Assembly (NCBI RefSeq): GCF_000142905.1
Contig: NW_013657663.1
Location: 434,001 to 498,000, forward strand
Direction: 5' to 3'
Source of the DNA: Thecamonas trahens ATCC 50062
Lineage: Eukaryota; Protista; Apusomonadida
Length of the DNA stretch: 64,000 nucleotides
The notes under the pieces were generated by a model, which saw nothing but the letters and a program-made list of their open reading frames with translations, made no database searches and was not told where the DNA came from. Within the stretch, counting starts at the first letter, position 1, and every line of letters starts with the position of its first letter. Below, one piece after another: positions 20,594 to 64,000 of the stretch. A program made the position numbers and the translations under genes.

Positions 20594-21138
20594 NNNNNNN
20601 NNNNNNNNNNNNNNNNNNNNNNNNNNNNNNNNNNNNNNNNNNNNNNNNNNNNNNNNNNNNNNNNNNNNNNNNNNNNNNNNNNNNNNNNNNNNNNNNNNNN
20701 NNNNNNNNNNNNNNNNNNNNNNNNNNNNNNNNNNNNNNNNNNNNNNNNNNNNNNNNNNNNNNNNNNNNNNNNNNNNNNNNNNNNNNNNNNNNNNNNNNNN
20801 NNNNNNNNNNNNNNNNNNNNNNNNNNNNNNNNNNNNNNNNNNNNNNNNNNNNNNNNNNNNNNNNNNNNNNNNNNNNNNNNNNNNNNNNNNNNNNNNNNNN
20901 NNNNNNNNNNNNNNNNNNNNNNNNNNNNNNNNNNNNNNNNNNNNNNNNNNNNNNNNNNNNNNNNNNNNNNNNNNNNNNNNNNNNNNNNNNNNNNNNNNNN
21001 NNNNNNNNNNNNNNNNNNNNNNNNNNNNNNNNNNNNNNNNNNNNNNNNNNNNNNNNNNNNNNNNNNNNNNNNNNNNNNNNNNNNNNNNNNNNNNNNNNNN
21101 NNNNNNNNNNNNNNNNNNNNNNNNNNNNNNNNNNNNNN
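20594..21138. other. Assembly gap (N run)
   Basis: 545 Ns; truncates the 3' end of the polymerase gene. Confidence 1.
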
Positions 21139-23027
21139 TTCTCATGCCAATATGCCGCTCGATACGTCTCCGCTCACCGGCGAGTGCGGCGCGCAAGCGC
21201 CGCTCTCGCCGGCGCGCGCAGGCGCGAGGGCGCGTCTTTTGCCGCGCTTTAGCAGGCAGCGTTTTGCTACGGCTCGCTGTCGGCGCAGATCTGGGGCCGC
21301 GGCGGCGATGGCGACGGCGGCGGCGGCGGCAGCAGCCTTGGCCTCGGCAGGGTCGGGTCGGCACGTCGCGCGGCGGGCCCGAGCCCGGCGCAGAGTCGGC
21401 AGCGCTGTGCGAGGCAGGGGAGGGGTGCGTCGAGGTCGACGGGCCCGACGGGCCCGACGCCGACGCGCTACTGTCGCGGGCTTCAGGTCCGCAGCTCTGC
21501 GACGAGTTCCACTCGCCCGGCCCGGGCGGCCCAGCAGCGCCCGTGTTGAACGGGAACGGCAGCGGCTCGCCGCGGCGAGGGCCTGATGAGACAAAGATGA
21601 GCGGGCGGCATGCCTTCTCGCGGTACATAAGCGAGGAGTTTTGAAAGTGCGCAATGAGGGCGGCCTTGCCCTGGATGCGCGCAGGCGAGATGGCGCAGAC
21701 CTTGAACGAGTTGAACGACGACCACTTGACGCCGTCAAACGCCTTCGCAAACGCCGCCACGGTCTGCGACTCGATAAAGTTGATGAACGCGTACCCGAGG
21801 TTGCACTTGTTCTTAAAGTCGATGGGCAGGTAGAAAAAGTCGTACGTGCCCTTGAACGACTTGTTGATCACCTCGAGCAGCGACGCCGCAGAGTGCTTGT
21901 TCGGAATGTTCCGCATCATCACCGTGTGGATGTCGGCAGAGTCGAGCGAGAGGTCCGGGTCCGGTTGCTCCGCCGCCCGCGGCCGCGCAGACGCCCGCAC
22001 CGCCCCGCGCCCGCCGCGCACCCCGCGCCGCCCGCCGCCCACATGGAGCTGCGCAGAGTACTTGGCGTACGACTTGCGCCCGGCAGCCCAGCCGGCCACG
22101 CTCTCCAGCCGCTGCTTGTGGAAGACCGCGTACGGGCCGGGGAAGATCATCGTCGAGAGGAGCGATGGCACAGGCTCGGAAGCGCCCTCGTACACAAACT
22201 TGAGCAGCGTCTGCCCAACCTCGGCAAAGTACGACCGCACCATCGGGTACTTGTAGCTCTGCCGGCAGATGTCGTTCGACGCAGACGGGTCTTCGATCGA
22301 AATGAGCTCCGGTCGCGACGGGTCCAGCCACCGCCGGATCGACTTGGGGAACAGATACCCGCCCTGCAGCACGGAAATCGCCTGCGTGTAGTCAAAGTCC
22401 AGCGAGTAGTACTGCAGAAACTGCGTGAGCCGCGCCCCAAGCACCATCCCAGACAGCGTCGCCGCGTCGCTCGCAGCCATTGGTCTCAGTTGCTCAAACG
22501 AGATGAGCATGAGAATGAGTGCGTGCGATGAGAGTCCTCCAGAAAACACCTGGTTGAGGTTGCTCTGCTTGAGGAACGTCTTGAGCACAAAGTACAGCGC
22601 CTTGAGCTCGGGAATGGCATACAGCGACTGCCGCACAAACGACACGTTCTCCACAGCTCCCAGCACGTCAAAGCAAATGTCTACCGTCAGCCGCGAGTAC
22701 GCCTCCACAAACTGTAGCAATGGAATCCGCGACGCCCCGCGGACCTGAACCTCGTCGTCCGTCGTGATCTCGTCTTGCACAAGCGCCTCCTTCAGCATTT
22801 CCAGTCGCACAGGTCCAAGCGTCATGTCCGTCCCAAGCACAACAAGGTCGATGTCAGAGTCAAACAGATACAACCCCGTCGCCACAGACCCGCACACAAG
22901 CACACGCGCCTCTGGCCAGAGCCCGACAACAACCTCGGTGATCCGCCCGATGATCTTGGCCCGCATCTGCTCCTCCGCCTTGGTTGCAGACACATGCTTG
23001 GAAAACTCTTCGATCTCCGCATGCAGT
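21139..23027 (-). CDS. Trf4/TENT4-type non-canonical poly(A) polymerase fused to a Mei2-like RRM (main exon; 3' end runs into the gap, 5' exons lie upstream)
   Basis: LHAEIEEF, GSVATGLYLFDSDIDLVV, VDICFD, LKTFLKQSNLNQVFSGGLSS, ISIEDP..NDICRQSY. In the same frame follows TVMMRNIPNK..YDFFYLPIDFKNKCNLGYAFINF..FNSFKVCAISPARIQGKAALIAHFQNSSLM..CRP. Acceptor CAG at 23030-23028. Confidence 0.9.
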
Positions 23028-23904
23028 CTGTTCACACATCACCCGCCAACCAGCACAGTCGTTGCCGTCATCGTCAACATCACCATCACCCACAGTGAGT
23101 CTCTCTTATCTACTTGAAACCCGCACCCGCCACTCCATCATCTCTTGGCCTGCTGCTCCCTTCCCTCCCTCGGCTCGGACCCGATCTCGCTCTGCACAGC
23201 GCTGTCTGTGGGGAGGGGAAGGACAAAAGAAAATGACACCGACAGGAGCAAAAACTTGCATGTCAGCCGTCGTCGTCACCACTCCCAGGCCACCAAGGTC
23301 AAGGCCACCAAGCATCACAGCGAACAGGCCTTGGCAGCAAACATGCCCAGGCGTTGTGCAGAGCTTAAAAGCAGAGGTTGGAGGTGTGATTGAAGGGTGA
23401 TGAACAACCACGACTATTCTCCCTGCTGCTCTCAAGAGCTGGGGAGAAAGAGAGAGAGAGAGCCCAAGAGGGAGGGAGGGGGGGGAAGCCGAGGGGGAAG
23501 GGGGAGCCAGCCAGCTGTCACATGGGAGGTTGCCGGTCAGCACACACAGGCGTAGCACAGGCGGTTGAAAGCTCCTACCCCCCTCACCATCACATCATCA
23601 CCATGGTGTATGACTTCCCCACAGGTGTAGGTCATTACAACAACACCAATGTGGCTCATGATGATGGTAGAGGGGGGGGGGGGGGGGAAGGGGGGGGGGG
23701 TCGGCCACGAGGGTGACGGCCAAGGAGCGACAACCAACCGGGGGAGGAAGGGAGAGGCAATGGTGGCCGTTCCAGGTGGCCAATGATAAAATCATTGACA
23801 AATAATGGTTGGACGGGGAGGGGGAAAGGGAGGGGGGGGGGGGGGGGGGCGGCTGGCTGGGGGGCGCTGGCTTGGCTTGGTGTGGCGCGGAGGCGACTGA
23901 GGGC

Positions 23905-24220
23905 GCCTGCAATTTTTGTCGACGTACGACTGAAAGGCCTCGACATGGTTAGAGGCCGGGTATGCAGACCTGGAGGCCCAAATGGCAGGAGCAGGACCAG
24001 GAGGGAGATGCTCAGAGGAAGTAGACGTTGTGTCTGGCTTGGCAGAGTTGGTTCCAGAGGGGGAGGCTTGGTTTGCTGGCGAAGACTCGAAGGTCACCTC
24101 TCGGTCGACTTGCTCGTCCACAGAGGTCGAAGCAACACCCGGCGAAGAGTTGGATGCCGAAGAGGGAGACGAAGAAGGAGATGAGCCAGGTGCGACGACA
24201 CCAGAAGGTGCTTCATCCAC
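23905..24220 (-). CDS. Probable upstream Ser/Pro-rich exon of the polymerase gene
   Basis: ATG-initiated low-complexity ORF (MDEAPSG...) on the same strand that runs into a C-tract typical of introns here. The splice path was not resolved. Confidence 0.4.
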
Positions 24221-24690
24221 ACTTGCTTCCCCTCCTTCTTTCTCTCCTCCTTTGCCCCCTTAAGCGGGTTGTTCGACCAGAATGACGCCGGGTCGCTCGC
24301 CACACCGCCGCCCTCGCCCGTCCTCTCGCTCGCCGCACTCATGGCTCAACCAACGAAAGACGAGTCTTGACCGTTTTTCTCGGAACGCCCTCTCCTTCTC
24401 GCCTCACCGTGGCACCCGGGCTACGGTTGCAGACCCCGCAGAGAGTTCACAGCAGTCGTATCCATCGTATCCACAGCTTGAGCACTCGGTGGTCATCGTC
24501 ATCACTTTGATTGCTAGCAGTTTGTGGCAGCATCGCTTGTTGCCTGCGTGGTGCGAGTGTTTTTGAGCACAATCGCTTCGTTGGGCTCGGCTCGGGCGAG
24601 GCATGCGAGGGAGAAATGGAGGCGGACAAGAGGCAAATGACAGAAGCTGTCTTCAATTTGAGTACACCATGGCGGGCGCCCAGGAGGCGG

Positions 24691-61900: not shown

Positions 61901-64000
61901 GCCGTACGGATCAGGCGGCGGGCTACTGGTGACCGAGACCGCAGAGGGTGCGATGGTGGCGGTGAACCAAACGCAGATCGACGACAACGTCGCCGGCAAG
62001 CTTGGTGGAGGGGTGGCGGTGTTTGAGCCGCTCGGCTGCAGTGTCCGGCTTGGTGCCGGCGCGTTAGTGAGCAATAATGAGGCCCGCGCCGGCGGCGGAG
62101 TCTCGGCCGTCCACGCTGGGTATTACGAGCCGGAGAGGACCGATTTTGTGGCTGCCGATCTCCCGCGGGCAGCCGCAGCAAGCTTGCCGGACCATTCGGT
62201 AGTGGTGCTTGGAATTGGTGCTGTGATCTCCGGGAACAGCGCTCGGTACGGCGGGGCGTTCTTTGGGTGCGGCGCGCACATTGACGCCAGCGCGGCGGTT
62301 GCATCCGCACCACCGACGGCAAGCGTGGGTGGAGGTGTTGGCTTCTTTTGCGTCGACGCCAACAACACGCTCCCATCGCCGGCACTGTGGCTGAGTGCGC
62401 CTGCAGGCGGAGTGGCTGGTGCGAGTGCAGGCGGCTACGGCGACATGTACGCGACGCCACCAGTGGCGCTGGCGGTAGAGGAGACTACGCCTGGAGTGAC
62501 GGCATCGGGCATGGTGTTTGGCCGCGGGACGTTGAGTGCGAGCGACGGGCTTGGCCAGCAAGTGGTTGATGCCGGATTGTCGCTTGGAGTTGCGCCGCTG
62601 GACAGTCATGTGATAGTGACGGGTGCTGAGCGCGGGGTGGCGTTTGTGGCGGTGGACGGGCTCGCGCATCTTGAGCTCATCAGCGCAGCTGCCGACGGCA
62701 GCCTCCTCCCGCTTGACGCATCACTGAAGCTGAGCCTGGTGCGGAGCAGCGAAGAGACGGCGGATCCAGAGGTGTCGACAAGTGTGACAATGCGGATCAC
62801 GGCGTGCCCGCGTGGATTGGGCTCGGACACCCAGTCTGCGCTGGCAAGCAACGTGCTCGTGTGCTCGCCATGTGACGAGGGCTCGTACTCGGACGTCGAG
62901 TCTATTGAGCCGTGCCGTGCGATTCCGGCGTGCCCGGCGTTCTCGCTGCGGCCAGGTTCGGCCAACACGACGCATCTGGTGGCGTGCATGTGCAAGGCCG
63001 GGACGTGGTCGCCCGAAGCGCCGCTAGTGACCGCATGCCGCCCGTGCCCGGTCGGCGCGGTGTGCGTAGGCGGCGGTGAGAGGCCCAAGGCAATGTACGG
63101 CTGGAAGCTGATCGACACAGCAACGTTTCGGTTCGCCGAGTGCCCGATCGCCTCGGCGTGCCGCGGCGGGTTTGTCGAGCCCGAGTGCGGACCCACGTAC
63201 AACCCGGACTCGTACCTTTGCCGGCAGTGTGCGGCCAACAGCTACCGCAGCCGTGACGGAGGGTGCGTCAAGTGCCCCCAGGCAGCGATCTCGCGGCTGT
63301 ATCTGTTTGTGGGCCTGGCCGCCGGCATTGCGTTTGGATCGGTGATTGTGATTGCGGCAGCGACGCGGGCGATCAAGGCCGAGACCGAGGACGACGCGCT
63401 GCTGATGAGCGAGTCGCAGGCTGCGGCTCGAATTGCTGCGTCTGCGTCTGCGATGACCCTTGCGGCGCGGAACGTGGTGATGCACGCCATGCGGCGAAAG
63501 CCGATCCCACACGCGCTTGGGGTGGCGTTTGTGTACCTGCAGGTGCTGGGCATTCTCGCCGATGCGCCGTTCAACTGGCCCGAGTCGCCGGTGGGGCGGA
63601 TTCTGCGGACGGCCAACGTGGCGAACATCGACCTGGGCATGTTTGCCACAGACTGCACCATCAAGGACTTTGGCACGCGGTACGCGTTCTCTGTCCTCGC
63701 GCCTGCGGCGTTCTTTTGCCTTGTCGGGCTGTTTGTGGCCGGTATTAAGAGCCTCCCTCGGTGCTTCTCGTGCGTTGCCGACACACATCTGGATCGGGTG
63801 TCGGGGTGGACGCTCGGCGGGCGACTGCTGTTTTCGTTTGGCCCGCTGCTGTACATCCCGCTCTCGCGGGCCGCGCTGGTGTTTTTTGATTGCACCAAGC
63901 TGCCCAATGGCAAGTACTACCTCGACGCAAACCTCGATGAAGAATGCGGTTCGGAAGCGTGGCTGGCGCTCCTTCCGCTGGCGATTCTGGCAGTAATCGC
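58923..64000 (+). CDS. Second FG-GAP/beta-helix/Cys-rich multi-pass receptor paralog (3'-partial; absent from the ORF track)
   Basis: ATG 58923 gives signal peptide MAMTVKGAIVAMVLLLVQDAALA. Then GDVDGDGSPD, GDINGDSLVD, ADFDGDGATD repeats, N.A..GGA repeats, Cys-rich repeats and TM-region YIPLSRAALVFFDC in the same frame at the window end. The ORF track lists no stop-terminated ORF in this frame. Confidence 0.9.
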   Translation, partial: MAMTVKGAIVAMVLLLVQDAALASCNVDYRLPAATTLASGSQPHGVVAAVLDSGTPFLDVAYIDFGVGSVMVMTRTGGGGWNVPASIDSTRTQPRTSAVGDVDGDGSPDLIVTFAAAGSNAIVLYRNIGWDATFPVSGLLQSYAVPVGGDPDGVAIGDINGDSLVDVVFSLAIADVIGAFMGTGPGTLAAAPIDLTSALPAAPSQPSQVSIVDVDVDGINDVVYVEAFGDRVIVMAGRPDIASTLATSVAVVDSAADTPFSFDVGDVDADSLPDIVVALFAEDKIALYVNLGDLAFSSRITLASEMDAPLTVAIADLNNDGAVDVVFCATFSDVVRWIPGNGAGGFTAAPQRIDDALSGARNVIVHDFDSDGALDVMAAAFFGGEVKLYTFDPSLSPFPYGRRLISNTANGARGVDAADFDGDGATDVVSASSFDNSIVVYYGDGTGYHLGNEVSVSGVADGVESVVAADYDGDGWTDIASASSGSGAIEWWRNIGKRNWAPSPMAIGTCDGAMKMSGGDFNNDGLPDLVAGCADAPSPSISAYINGDDGSTWTVQVVYSTPLIITNMDTAVGDIDDDGFVDVLFVASSVRLVGWASNAGGTGFLPPTTIDTLAIGFTIAAALCDVDDDGDLDVISAVANGGGSAISLYTQTAPGTISSTPTDLGGSYNLPYSISCRDASGDGFPDVAVASYSSDQISWLRNRGLGDGTFEAQEILTSTSIGAYRVKIVDVNNDGFNDLLCAGNDDDTIESFIQRPVLNATPMPAALPPHPAAVPLKVTDIYTALNTASQCTPQRIELAAGSVVVGGCSADGYLTVPAGAMWTIAGPAGVAPALRPRIDCGSAGGVMFEVGAGAQLKMTDVVLAGATVGSQPSAVTGLRVSGLDATLRLERVLVTGFSSQAASELQAMSGIGGSLAAVDGGRLDALDSAFDSNVAKGVGGAVALVGSAPSAHFTNCSFVANTALGGGGGAVAVLGSSASVVFDSGSTLASNSAPYGSGGGLLVTETAEGAMVAVNQTQIDDNVAGKLGGGVAVFEPLGCSVRLGAGALVSNNEARAGGGVSAVHAGYYEPERTDFVAADLPRAAAASLPDHSVVVLGIGAVISGNSARYGGAFFGCGAHIDASAAVASAPPTASVGGGVGFFCVDANNTLPSPALWLSAPAGGVAGASAGGYGDMYATPPVALAVEETTPGVTASGMVFGRGTLSASDGLGQQVVDAGLSLGVAPLDSHVIVTGAERGVAFVAVDGLAHLELISAAADGSLLPLDASLKLSLVRSSEETADPEVSTSVTMRITACPRGLGSDTQSALASNVLVCSPCDEGSYSDVESIEPCRAIPACPAFSLRPGSANTTHLVACMCKAGTWSPEAPLVTACRPCPVGAVCVGGGERPKAMYGWKLIDTATFRFAECPIASACRGGFVEPECGPTYNPDSYLCRQCAANSYRSRDGGCVKCPQAAISRLYLFVGLAAGIAFGSVIVIAAATRAIKAETEDDALLMSESQAAARIAASASAMTLAARNVVMHAMRRKPIPHALGVAFVYLQVLGILADAPFNWPESPVGRILRTANVANIDLGMFATDCTIKDFGTRYAFSVLAPAAFFCLVGLFVAGIKSLPRCFSCVADTHLDRVSGWTLGGRLLFSFGPLLYIPLSRAALVFFDCTKLPNGKYYLDANLDEECGSEAWLALLPLAILAVI

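What the first reader, a model, noticed from the sequence alone, without database searches (positions are those of the whole stretch)
21600..23027. Trf4/TENT4 poly(A) polymerase fused to a Mei2-type RRM: candidate self-targeting RNA-tailing enzyme
Seen: one uninterrupted frame carries an intact Pol-beta nucleotidyltransferase (GS..DSDID plus third Asp in VDICFD), a PAP-associated domain with IEDP..ND, an RGG-rich linker (about 21990-22040) and a full Mei2 C-terminal RRM (about 21925-21600). Known: Trf4/TENT4 enzymes lack their own RNA-binding domain and rely on Air1/2 or ZCCHC adaptors. The IEDP..ND loop is Trf4-like and lacks the His that gives Cid1-type enzymes UTP specificity. The Mei2 RRM3 family (fission-yeast Mei2, plant AML/TEL) binds specific RNAs in meiotic and developmental control, and Mei2 antagonises Mmi1-dependent polyadenylation and exosome decay. 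Inference: the fusion hard-wires sequence-specific tailing to Mei2-type target RNAs, possibly a sexual or encystment switch. I do not know this architecture from characterised proteins.
Basis: partly seen in the sequence, partly recalled or inferred. Interest (0 to 1): 0.85.

Follow-up and report, generated by a model that had tools for sequence, protein, structure and literature searches.

The report
TENT4-type RNA-tailing enzyme fused to Mei2 RRM
In the marine flagellate Thecamonas trahens, one gene joins an intact Trf4/TENT4-type RNA-tailing enzyme to a Mei2-type RNA-binding domain; I found this combination in no other protein in very large databases, and its function is only inferred.

Summary
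The window is Thecamonas trahens ATCC 50062. On the minus strand, an open frame from 23035 to 21140 has no stop in 632 codons.

**Domains**
- It carries a Trf4/TENT4-like nucleotidyltransferase core (yeast Trf4 3nyb, E 1.7e-31; AF2 model pLDDT 91, TM 0.81 to 3nyb).
- All 21 columns invariant across 46 family members are kept: G49, S50, D61, D63, D119 and 16 more.
- Asn254 sits where Cid1 and URT1 have the UTP-selecting His.
- A disordered RGG linker follows, then a canonical Mei2 RRM3 (Pfam RRM_2, E 2e-38; S. pombe Mei2 RRM3, E 1.7e-39).

**Status in databases**
- NCBI already lists it as "PAP associated domain containing 5 isoform a" (541 aa).
- That model is cut short at the N-terminus.

**Rarity**
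- An exhaustive HMMER scan of 1.84 billion representative proteins found no second protein with both domains.
- A word-index search, the ESM Atlas, 80 metagenome loci and the literature also found none.

**Origin**
- The polymerase half groups with a divergent apusomonad TENT4 paralog.
- The genome also holds a separate three-RRM Mei2-like gene.

**Limits**
- RNA evidence is partial: exact-match metatranscriptome contigs cover the RRM plus linker and part of the polymerase, but none bridges 22025-22390.
- RRM-guided tailing of U-rich RNAs is inferred.
- The proposed link to meiosis or Mmi1 has no support.

I rate it a new variant of a known kind, of moderate interest.

The parts
21140..23035 (-). 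Continuous open reading frame of 632 codons, from the stop at 23041-23039 down to the assembly gap. It carries both domains.
   Evidence: 0 stops in frame against 11-12 in the other frames. There is no in-frame Met between residues 296 and 373.
21267..22966 (-). The public NCBI gene model P0001 (541 aa). It runs from the ATG at 22966-22964 to exon 1 end at 21365, has a predicted 74-nt intron at 21364-21291, and a last exon at 21290-21267 ending in TAG.
   Evidence: mapped onto the sequence. I could not verify the intron: reads there were swamped by GCC-repeat matches from other organisms.
22967..23035 (-). 23 codons upstream of the annotated ATG. They encode the conserved N-terminal helix of the Trf4/TENT4 core (L4, H5, E7 and F11 are nearly invariant in the family). 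There is no ATG here, so a 5' exon is probably missing from the model.
   Evidence: alignment to both T. trahens paralogs; near-invariant columns; helix at residues 2-15 with pLDDT about 92. Trf4 alignment starts at residue 5.
22640..23026 (-). Catalytic palm of the Pol-beta nucleotidyltransferase. G49-S50 lie at 22891-22886, D61 at 22855-22853, D63 at 22849-22847 and D119 at 22681-22679.
   Evidence: PF22600 at residues 4-132 and PF01909; alignment to Trf4 SDID. G49, S50, D61, D63 and D119 are invariant in 46 family members.
22202..22639 (-). Central, PAP-associated domain. Pfam PAP_assoc covers 22441-22283. The IEDPSASND loop has N254 (22276-22274) at the position of the Cid1/URT1 His.
   Evidence: PF03828, E 1.1e-9. 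Trf4 has SNN and URT1 has SHD at this position. E248, D249, N254 and D255 are nearly invariant; model pLDDT 91, best fold match 3nyb_A at TM 0.81.
22106..22201 (-). C-terminal helical extension of the polymerase core (the PSLLSTMIFPGPY...HKQRL region). It is shared with the T. trahens C50 paralog.
   Evidence: the alignment to L012 runs to residue 310; helix at 299-319.
21929..22105 (-). Gly/Arg-rich linker predicted to be disordered, with the RGG run at 22039-22001. It is in frame, free of stops and has coding-like GC3.
   Evidence: GC3 0.89 and 0 stops; pLDDT below 50 for residues 310-364; an exact-match poly(A)-selected RNA contig covers 21787-22024.
21542..21928 (-). Mei2-type RRM3, including its C-terminal helical extension. 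Pfam RRM_2 covers 21925-21641. F417 corresponds to S. pombe F644, I454 to I681 and S450 to S677.
   Evidence: E 2.1e-38. Mei2 RRM3 7eio/7eiu/6yyl, E about 2e-39; pLDDT 81-95. The contact residues come from PMC9486875.
21365..21541 (-). Ser/Pro/Gly-rich low-complexity C-terminal tail. The true C-terminus is uncertain: either the annotated intron is used, or the frame reads on towards the gap.
   Evidence: Codon-position GC periodicity is lost below about 21373.
20594..21138 (.). Assembly gap of 545 N. It lies downstream of the gene body and not at the domain junction.

Best explanation
This is a real single-polypeptide gene of Thecamonas trahens. It encodes a lineage-specific, divergent paralog of the Trf4/TENT4 non-canonical poly(A) polymerases whose C-terminus has acquired a canonical Mei2-type RRM3 through a flexible RGG linker.

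The most likely mechanism has three steps:
1. The RRM, helped by the RGG linker, binds single-stranded U-rich RNA.
2. This holds the RNA near the catalytic cleft of the attached polymerase.
3. The polymerase then adds non-templated A-rich tails to the RNA's 3' end.

In this reading the fused RRM does in cis what Air1/2 or ZCCHC7 do for Trf4/TENT4, and what the RRM protein RNP-8 does for GLD-2, in trans.

**Shown:** both folds, the intact catalytic and nucleotide-pocket residues, the in-frame continuity, and the uniqueness of the architecture.

**Inferred:** enzymatic activity, preference for ATP, RNA specificity, and the fate of tailed RNAs (decay or stabilisation).
For: **Domains and fold**
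- Domain calls at E 2e-38 (RRM_2) and E 1.7e-31 (Trf4 3nyb).
- The AF2 model of residues 1-320 has pLDDT 91 and pTM 0.90. Its best PDB fold match is the TRAMP polymerase core 3nyb_A (TM 0.81).
- In the full-length model the RRM has pLDDT 81-95 and the linker is below 50.

**Catalytic residues**
- All 21 columns invariant in 46 TENT4/Trf4 proteins are kept, including G49, S50, D61, D63 and D119.
- N254 aligns with the Asn of Trf4 and with the His of URT1.

**Family placement**
- The nearest named relatives are TENT4B and PAPD5/7 proteins of animals and plants, and fungal polynucleotide adenylyltransferases.

**RNA-binding residues**
- The counterparts of Mei2 F644, I681 and S677 are conserved (alignment with PMC9486875).

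**Continuity of the frame**
- There are 0 stops in 632 codons.
- There is no Met from which an RRM-only product could start.
- Linker GC3 is 0.89.

**RNA evidence**
- Exact-match contigs from four independent marine RNA libraries were found.
- One of them is oligo-dT selected and covers 21787-22024 (RRM into linker).
- Another covers 22390-22540 (polymerase).

**Not a mis-join**
- Neither half has a near-identical copy elsewhere in the genome.

**Precedent in the literature**
- TENTs other than TENT1 lack an RNA-binding domain and use partners such as RNP-8 (PMC7988573).
Against: - No RNA contig bridges 22025-22390, so one transcript carrying both domains is not directly shown.
- The 5' end (no ATG before 22966) and the 3' end (unverified intron, nearby gap) are unresolved.
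- The polymerase is the most divergent of 46 family members. It deviates at 19 of 63 highly conserved columns, so altered or lost activity cannot be excluded.
- Three S. pombe RNA-contact positions differ: R631 to P, N680 to R and K690 to H.
- No ortholog was found in any other organism, so conservation cannot argue for function.
- AF2 gives no usable geometry between the two domains (pTM 0.38).
Confidence: 0.6

Rival explanations
1. The fusion is an artefact of assembly or annotation. In the cell, the polymerase and a small RRM-only Mei2-like protein are made separately. This could be because a base-call error hides a stop, because of an internal promoter or start, or because of alternative processing in the linker.
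For: No contig spans 22025-22390. Short RRM_2-only proteins of 145-260 aa are common elsewhere. The contig has a gap about 800 bases away, and the public model is imperfect at both ends.
Against: - There is no stop in 632 codons, and both domains are in the same frame.
- There is no in-frame Met between residue 296 and M373, which lies inside the first RRM strand.
- Linker GC3 is 0.89.
- A poly(A)-selected RNA contig runs unspliced from the RRM to 22024 in the linker.
- Neither half is duplicated elsewhere in the genome.
Confidence: 0.1
2. The fusion protein is real, but the simple model of 'RRM targets, polymerase adenylates' is wrong. Three alternatives: the divergent core prefers another nucleotide or is catalytically weak; the RRM acts as a protein-interaction or autoinhibitory module; or the protein works as an RNA-binding scaffold.
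For: - There are 19 deviations at 63 highly conserved columns, the most in the family sample. They include F48C, P58F, K108Q and Y171H.
- TENT4 enzymes are known to incorporate other nucleotides as well as A (established knowledge of mixed tailing).
- No orthologs are available to show purifying selection.
Against: - Every invariant column is kept, and so are the E248, D249, N254 and D255 residues of the EDP..ND loop.
- The fold is predicted with high confidence.
- The core residues of the RRM's RNA-binding face are canonical.
Confidence: 0.2
3. The protein is the T. trahens TRAMP polymerase itself and works with Mtr4 and the nuclear exosome in general RNA surveillance. The RRM simply replaces an Air-type zinc-knuckle subunit.
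For: An Mtr4-type helicase is present in the genome. The core is most similar to the Trf4 TRAMP structure.
Against: - The genome has two other Trf4/TENT4-like genes with long N-terminal regions (C4 and C50).
- The C4 gene sits with the canonical plant and fungal clades.
- The fusion protein has almost no sequence N-terminal to the core. In yeast Trf4, the Mtr4 contact lies in that N-terminal region (established knowledge).
- It belongs to a divergent apusomonad-specific subgroup.
Confidence: 0.1

Closest known systems
Trf4/Trf5 (yeast TRAMP), Cid14 (S. pombe), TENT4A/B (PAPD7/PAPD5) non-canonical poly(A) polymerases
   Same: - The same catalytic core of Pol-beta palm plus PAP-associated domain.
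- The best sequence and fold match is Trf4 3nyb.
- All invariant residues are kept, with Asn at the nucleotide-selectivity position.
   Different: - Those enzymes have no RNA-binding domain. They depend on Air1/2 or ZCCHC7 zinc-knuckle partners and on Mtr4.
- This protein carries a C-terminal Mei2-type RRM and an RGG linker.
- It has little or no N-terminal extension.
- It is the most divergent core in the sample.
Mei2 / Mei2-like proteins (S. pombe Mei2, plant AML and TEL, oomycete B-box Mei2-like)
   Same: The RRM3 is canonical. It is 58-68% identical to the best-matching Mei2-like RRM3 domains (65.6% to Phytophthora, 57-59% to plants). It matches S. pombe Mei2 RRM3 over residues 370-498 (E 1.7e-39). 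The RNP1 Phe (F644 equivalent) and I681 are kept.
   Different: - The two N-terminal classical RRMs that define the Mei2 family architecture are absent.
- The domain is attached to an enzyme.
- T. trahens has a separate three-RRM Mei2-like gene, whose RRM3 is only 37% identical.
TENT1 (TUT1 / Star-PAP)
   Same: It is a terminal nucleotidyltransferase with its own RRM. It is described as the only TENT carrying an RRM, and as possibly independent of RNA-binding partners (PMC7988573).
   Different: TENT1 has an N-terminal zinc finger and a classical RRM before the palm, plus a KA-1 domain, and it is a U6 uridylyltransferase / poly(A) polymerase. Here the RRM is C-terminal and Mei2-type, and the core is TENT4-type.
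GLD-2 with RNP-8 or GLD-3 (C. elegans cytoplasmic poly(A) polymerase complexes)
   Same: The functional logic is the same. A TENT without an RNA-binding domain gets its substrate choice from an RRM protein, in a germline and meiosis setting.
   Different: The partnership is in trans, the polymerase belongs to the TENT2 subfamily, and the RRM is not Mei2-type.

Membership tests
Trf4/TENT4 non-canonical poly(A) polymerases | Pol-beta nucleotidyltransferase signature: the hG[GS] motif, the DxD pair and a third catalytic Asp | tested here: met
   G49-S50, D61, D63 and D119 are invariant columns in the 46-sequence family alignment and align to the Trf4 SDID motif.
Trf4/TENT4 non-canonical poly(A) polymerases | A PAP-associated (central) domain following the palm | tested here: met
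   PF03828, E 1.1e-9, above the Pfam cut-off. The AF2 model has pLDDT 91 and its best fold match is 3nyb_A at TM 0.81.
Trf4/TENT4 non-canonical poly(A) polymerases | Closer to Trf4/TENT4 than to the Cid1/TUT, GLD-2 or mtPAP subfamilies | tested here: met
   Trf4 scores E 1.7e-31, against URT1 at 4e-16, TUT7 at 7.5e-8 and Cid1 at about 1e-4. The named nearest hits are TENT4B and PAPD5/7. In the tree it lies inside the TENT4/Trf4 ingroup, apart from the Cid1-like T. trahens genes.
Trf4/TENT4 non-canonical poly(A) polymerases | No UTP-selecting His in the nucleotide-recognition loop (Asn instead) | tested here: met
   N254 aligns with the Trf4 Asn and the URT1 His. N254 is a nearly invariant column. 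Two other T. trahens TENTs (C51, C11) do carry His there.
Trf4/TENT4 non-canonical poly(A) polymerases | Adenylyltransferase activity on RNA 3' ends | not testable with these tools
   This needs a biochemical assay.
Trf4/TENT4 non-canonical poly(A) polymerases | Works in a TRAMP-like complex with a zinc-knuckle adaptor and Mtr4 | not tested
   An Mtr4-type gene exists in the genome. No interaction test was run.
Mei2-like protein family | The signature C-terminal RRM3 (Pfam RRM_2) with its extra helices | tested here: met
   PF04059, E 2.1e-38, covering 95 of 97 profile positions. The alignment to S. pombe Mei2 RRM3 structures spans residues 370-498.
Mei2-like protein family | Two N-terminal classical RRMs preceding RRM3 | tested here: not met
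   There is no RRM_1 hit in the ORF, and the N-terminal 320 residues are the polymerase. The genome's C27 gene does have this architecture. The fusion therefore carries the Mei2 signature domain but is not a Mei2-family protein by architecture.
Mei2-like protein family | RNA-contact residues of the UU pocket (S. pombe F644, I681, S677, N680) and of the third base (K690, R631) | tested here: inconclusive
   F417, I454 and S450 are conserved. N680 is R453, K690 is H463 and R631 is P404 (alignment mapped with PMC9486875). From memory, these substitutions match the plant Mei2-like consensus.
TENT1 / TUT1 / Star-PAP | An N-terminal C2H2 zinc finger and classical RRM before the palm, and a KA-1 domain | tested here: not met
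   Pfam finds none of these. The RRM is C-terminal and of the RRM_2 type.

The most novel reading that the evidence does not exclude
The fusion may be a 'Rosetta stone'. It would reveal that Mei2-type RRM proteins and TENT4/Trf4-type tailing enzymes act together in eukaryotes generally. On this reading, Mei2-like proteins of fungi, plants and oomycetes control their target RNAs by recruiting or opposing a non-canonical poly(A) polymerase in trans. The Thecamonas protein would then be a natural, minimal, self-targeting version of that pathway.
Probability: 0.1. Interest if true: 0.7.

Novelty: new variant of a known kind. Interest (0 to 1): 0.45.

Why it matters
**Why the architecture is of interest**
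- Non-canonical poly(A) polymerases of the TENT4/Trf4 type are thought to have no RNA-binding domain of their own and to be aimed by partner proteins.
- A natural enzyme with a well-understood, sequence-reading RRM wired to it would be a compact test case for how tethering sets substrate choice.
- It hints at a possible functional link between Mei2-type RNA binding and RNA tailing.
- It could also serve as a template for engineered RNA-tailing tools.

**What limits its weight**
- It is a single gene in one little-studied flagellate.
- No ortholog is known and there are no functional data.
- The domain combination can already be read from the public annotation.

Tried and rejected
1. **Multi-stretch hits in the exhaustive scan.** I checked whether P0121, P0122, P0005 and six others were further fusions. 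They are tandem RRM_2 proteins, and one is an RRM_2-La fusion.

2. **Metagenome scan.** It gave 80 Mei2-RRM loci. tblastn with the polymerase half found nothing in any of them.

3. **ESM Atlas.** No cluster carries both families.

4. **RRM tree.** It is unresolved at the base, so no donor lineage can be named.

5. **Full-length AF2 with a mixed alignment.** pTM was 0.38 and the central domain was poorly modelled because of a shallow, misaligned MSA. It is unusable for inter-domain geometry. The polymerase-only run resolved the core.

6. **5' exon.** A script listed many ATG/GT/AG combinations upstream, without a way to choose between them. An upstream open frame (23933-24259, minus strand) with a P-x-I-W motif at the family's usual spacing got no profile support on its own (hhalign probability 0.03).

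7. **Joined exon models.** Exons were examined by reference only. merely printed short candidate joins.

8. **YTH (Mmi1-type) domain.** It was not found in the genome, but the search had no positive control.

9. **Read laying.** The very high depth at 21295-21340 comes from GCC/GGC repeats of other organisms, not from this gene.

10. **Earlier scan notes.** None concerns this locus.

11. **Literature searches.** Searches for Mei2 with Thecamonas, and for the Pfam pair, returned nothing.
Full report
**Identity of the window and the gene**

The best database match to the open frame is a 541-aa NCBI protein of Thecamonas trahens ATCC 50062. It is 100% identical and is named "PAP associated domain containing 5 isoform a". 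Its precomputed Pfam list already contains PF22600, PF01909, PF03828 and PF04059. The window is contig 17, 434001-498000, of a 28.7-Mb assembly. So the gene is annotated and its domain content is in public records. No paper that I could find mentions it.

**Check of the observation**

On the minus strand, an open frame runs from 23035 to 21140 and then into a 545-N assembly gap at 20594-21138. It has no stop in 632 codons. The two other frames of the same stretch have 11 and 12 stops.

Domain hits:
- Pfam finds MTPAP-like_central at residues 4-132, NTP_transf_2, PAP_assoc at 199-251 and RRM_2 at 371-465 (E 2.1e-38).
- Against solved structures, residues 370-498 match S. pombe Mei2 RRM3 (E 1.7e-39), and residues 5-278 match yeast Trf4 from the TRAMP core (3nyb, E 1.7e-31).
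- The Cid1, GLD-2 and TUT4/7 chains score E 1e-4 to 1e-8, and CutA and URT1 score 9e-9 and 4e-16, all far weaker than Trf4.

- G49-S50.
- D61 and D63 in DSDID.
- D119 in VDICFD.
- IEDPSASND.
- An RGG run at 22039-22001.

**State of the polymerase**

I aligned the first 320 residues with 45 TENT4/Trf4 relatives from animals, plants, fungi and metagenomes.
- All 21 invariant columns are kept in this protein. They include G49, S50, D61, D63, D119, K152, G166, G167, S170, Y210 and P250.
- The nearly invariant E248, D249, N254 and D255 are also kept.
- N254 aligns with the Asn of Trf4 (SNN) and with the His of the uridylyltransferase URT1 (SHD).
- With this alignment, AlphaFold2 models residues 1-320 at mean pLDDT 91 and pTM 0.90.
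- Foldseek ranks 3nyb_A first (TM 0.81, 30% identity).

The core is nevertheless unusual. It departs from the consensus at 19 of 63 highly conserved columns, the most of any sequence in the set. The next most divergent are the T. trahens contig-50 paralog and its Tara Oceans ortholog, at 16 each.

**State of the RRM**

The domain is a canonical Mei2 RRM3.
- It is 58-68% identical to the best-matching Mei2-like RRM3 domains: 65.6% to Phytophthora, 57-59% to plants, and up to 68% to metagenome sequences.
- The crystal-structure paper on Mei2 RRM3 with meiRNA (PMC9486875) identifies a UU-binding pocket.
- I mapped that paper's contact residues through the alignment:
  - F644, I681 and S677 are conserved as F417, I454 and S450.
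  - Y629 and F634 are conserved.
  - R631, N680 and K690 are Pro, Arg and His.
- Binding to U-rich single-stranded RNA is therefore a reasonable inference. The exact motif is not.

**Is it one protein?**

Arguments from the sequence:
- Both domains share one frame with no stop.
- There is no in-frame Met between residue 296 and M373, and M373 lies inside the first RRM strand.
- The 56-codon linker has GC3 of 0.89, like the flanking coding sequence.
- Neither half has a close copy elsewhere in the genome that an assembler could have mis-joined. The nearest polymerase paralog is 35% identical, and the only other RRM_2 locus is 37% identical.

RNA evidence is partial.
- No dedicated T. trahens RNA run was offered.
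- Marine RNA libraries from four independent studies contain contigs with zero mismatches to this locus:
  - 21424-21600
  - 21566-21773
  - 21731-21924
  - 21757-21957
  - 21787-22024
  - 22390-22540
- The 21787-22024 contig comes from an oligo-dT library and runs unspliced from the RRM into the RGG linker.
- Nothing covers 22025-22390, so one transcript carrying both domains is not directly shown.

**Gene model**

The public model starts at the ATG at 22966.
- The 23 codons upstream align with both T. trahens paralogs and with Trf4.
- They contain four nearly invariant family residues: L4, H5, E7 and F11.
- They form a confidently modelled helix.
- They have no ATG, and they are preceded by a stop at 23041-23039.
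- A 5' exon is therefore probably missing. An AG at 23029-23028 is a candidate acceptor.
- I could not pick the exon.
- I did not search or fold any joined model. Exons were handled by reference only.
- At the 3' end, the annotated 74-nt intron (21364-21291) and the TAG at 21269-21267 are unverified.

**How rare is the architecture?**

- An exhaustive HMMER scan of 1.84 billion representative proteins, using the two-domain query, found 14,914 relatives.
- A protein with both domains would score the sum of the two. Only four proteins exceeded 190 bits: the protein itself and three proteins made of repeated RRM_2 domains.
- Every multi-stretch hit in the top 150 that I checked, or that carries a precomputed Pfam list, holds repeated RRM_2 domains and no polymerase.
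- The word-index search of 5.8 billion clusters found no ortholog between 100% and 66% identity. Among TENT4/Trf4 hits, only the protein itself carries PF04059.
- No ESM Atlas cluster of 50 or more members combines the families.
- None of 80 metagenome contigs encoding a Mei2-type RRM has a polymerase beside it.
- Weakly similar fusions scoring below about 158 bits in total, and organisms not yet sequenced, are not excluded.

**Origin**

T. trahens has six PAP_assoc loci:
- Two are Cid1-like, with the His.
- One is small and carries a JAZ-type zinc finger.
- Three are Trf4/TENT4-like: contigs 4, 50 and this one.

In a maximum-likelihood tree, the fusion's core groups with the contig-50 paralog and its ortholog from a Tara Oceans metagenome. 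Support is 98/95, but on long branches. The three share unusual residues such as C121 and H171. The contig-4 gene falls with the canonical clades. The simplest reading is a duplication within the apusomonad lineage, followed by acquisition of the RRM.

The RRM tree is unresolved. The fused RRM is much less diverged than the RRM3 of the genome's own three-RRM Mei2-like gene.

**Mechanism and comparison**

The review PMC7988573 makes three relevant points:
- TENTs lack a typical RNA-binding domain, with the exception of TENT1.
- TENT1 is the only member with an RRM.
- GLD-2 gets its targets from partners, including the RRM protein RNP-8.

The Thecamonas protein fits the same logic with different parts: a TENT4-type core, a flexible RGG linker and a Mei2-type RRM in cis. 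I consider RRM-guided tailing with A-rich tails the most likely function.
- Confidence that the fusion protein is real is about 0.85.
- Confidence in the whole mechanism is about 0.6.
- Whether tailing leads to decay or to stabilisation cannot be said.

- No YTH domain was found (no positive control).
- An Mtr4-type helicase is present.
- RRM_2 combines with other modules elsewhere, namely La, B-box and tandem arrays. This makes a new combination less surprising.

**Verdict**

It is a new variant of a known kind (a terminal nucleotidyltransferase with a built-in RNA-binding module). It is already present in public annotation, undescribed in the literature, found in a single species and functionally untested. 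Interest is moderate.

Noticed in passing
window 22967-23041 (minus strand): The public gene model starts at the ATG at 22966. The 23 codons upstream are conserved family sequence without an ATG, and they are preceded by a stop at 23041-23039. A 5' exon and intron are probably missing from the annotation. An AG at 23029-23028 is a candidate acceptor.
   Followed up: partly
window 23933-24259 (minus strand): A Ser/Pro-rich open frame without an ATG. It contains a P-x-I-W motif about 16 codons before GT donors at 23930 and 23927. In Trf4/TENT4 proteins a PW motif sits 13-15 residues before the LHxEI helix, so this may be an upstream exon. On its own it gets no profile support.
   Followed up: partly
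L014 2471-4558 (+) = genome contig 27, about 91470-93560: This is the T. trahens canonical three-RRM Mei2-like gene. Its RRM3 is strongly diverged: it is 37% identical to the fused RRM and has by far the longest branch in the RRM tree. The fused copy is the conservative one.
   Followed up: partly
L012 3312-5930 (-) and L095 325-2700 (+): A divergent TENT4-like subgroup. It consists of the T. trahens contig-50 paralog and a close ortholog on a Tara Oceans marine metagenome contig (ERZ908065). Each deviates at 16 of 63 conserved family columns. The subgroup is sister to the fusion's polymerase.
   Followed up: partly
L013 3187-4455 (+); L009 3253-5640 (-); L010 3706-6000 (-); L011 3727-6360 (-): The other T. 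trahens TENTs.
- The small contig-1 gene has an N-terminal zf-C2H2_jaz hit exactly at the Pfam cut-off.
- The contig-51 and contig-11 genes carry the Cid1-type His (THN, NHN) and RGG-rich tails.
- By eye, the contig-11 and contig-4 genes have Cys/His zinc-finger-like motifs in their N-terminal regions that Pfam does not recognise.
   Followed up: partly
proteins P0121, P0122, P0124 (database hits): Mei2-type RRM_2 occurs in other unusual architectures. Two metagenome proteins of about 1100 aa have five tandem RRM_2 domains plus one RRM_1. One protein has two RRM_2 domains and a La domain. Oomycete Mei2-like proteins are labelled B-box proteins.
   Followed up: no
window 21291-21340: A GCC/GGC trinucleotide-rich stretch inside the annotated 3' intron draws very high apparent depth and many false joints from unrelated organisms in the metatranscriptomes. 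The intron could not be tested there.
   Followed up: no
whole genome G000: No YTH domain (Mmi1-type) was found in a six-frame search, but the search had no positive control. One Mtr4-type arch-domain gene lies on contig 42, at 62947-63471.
   Followed up: no
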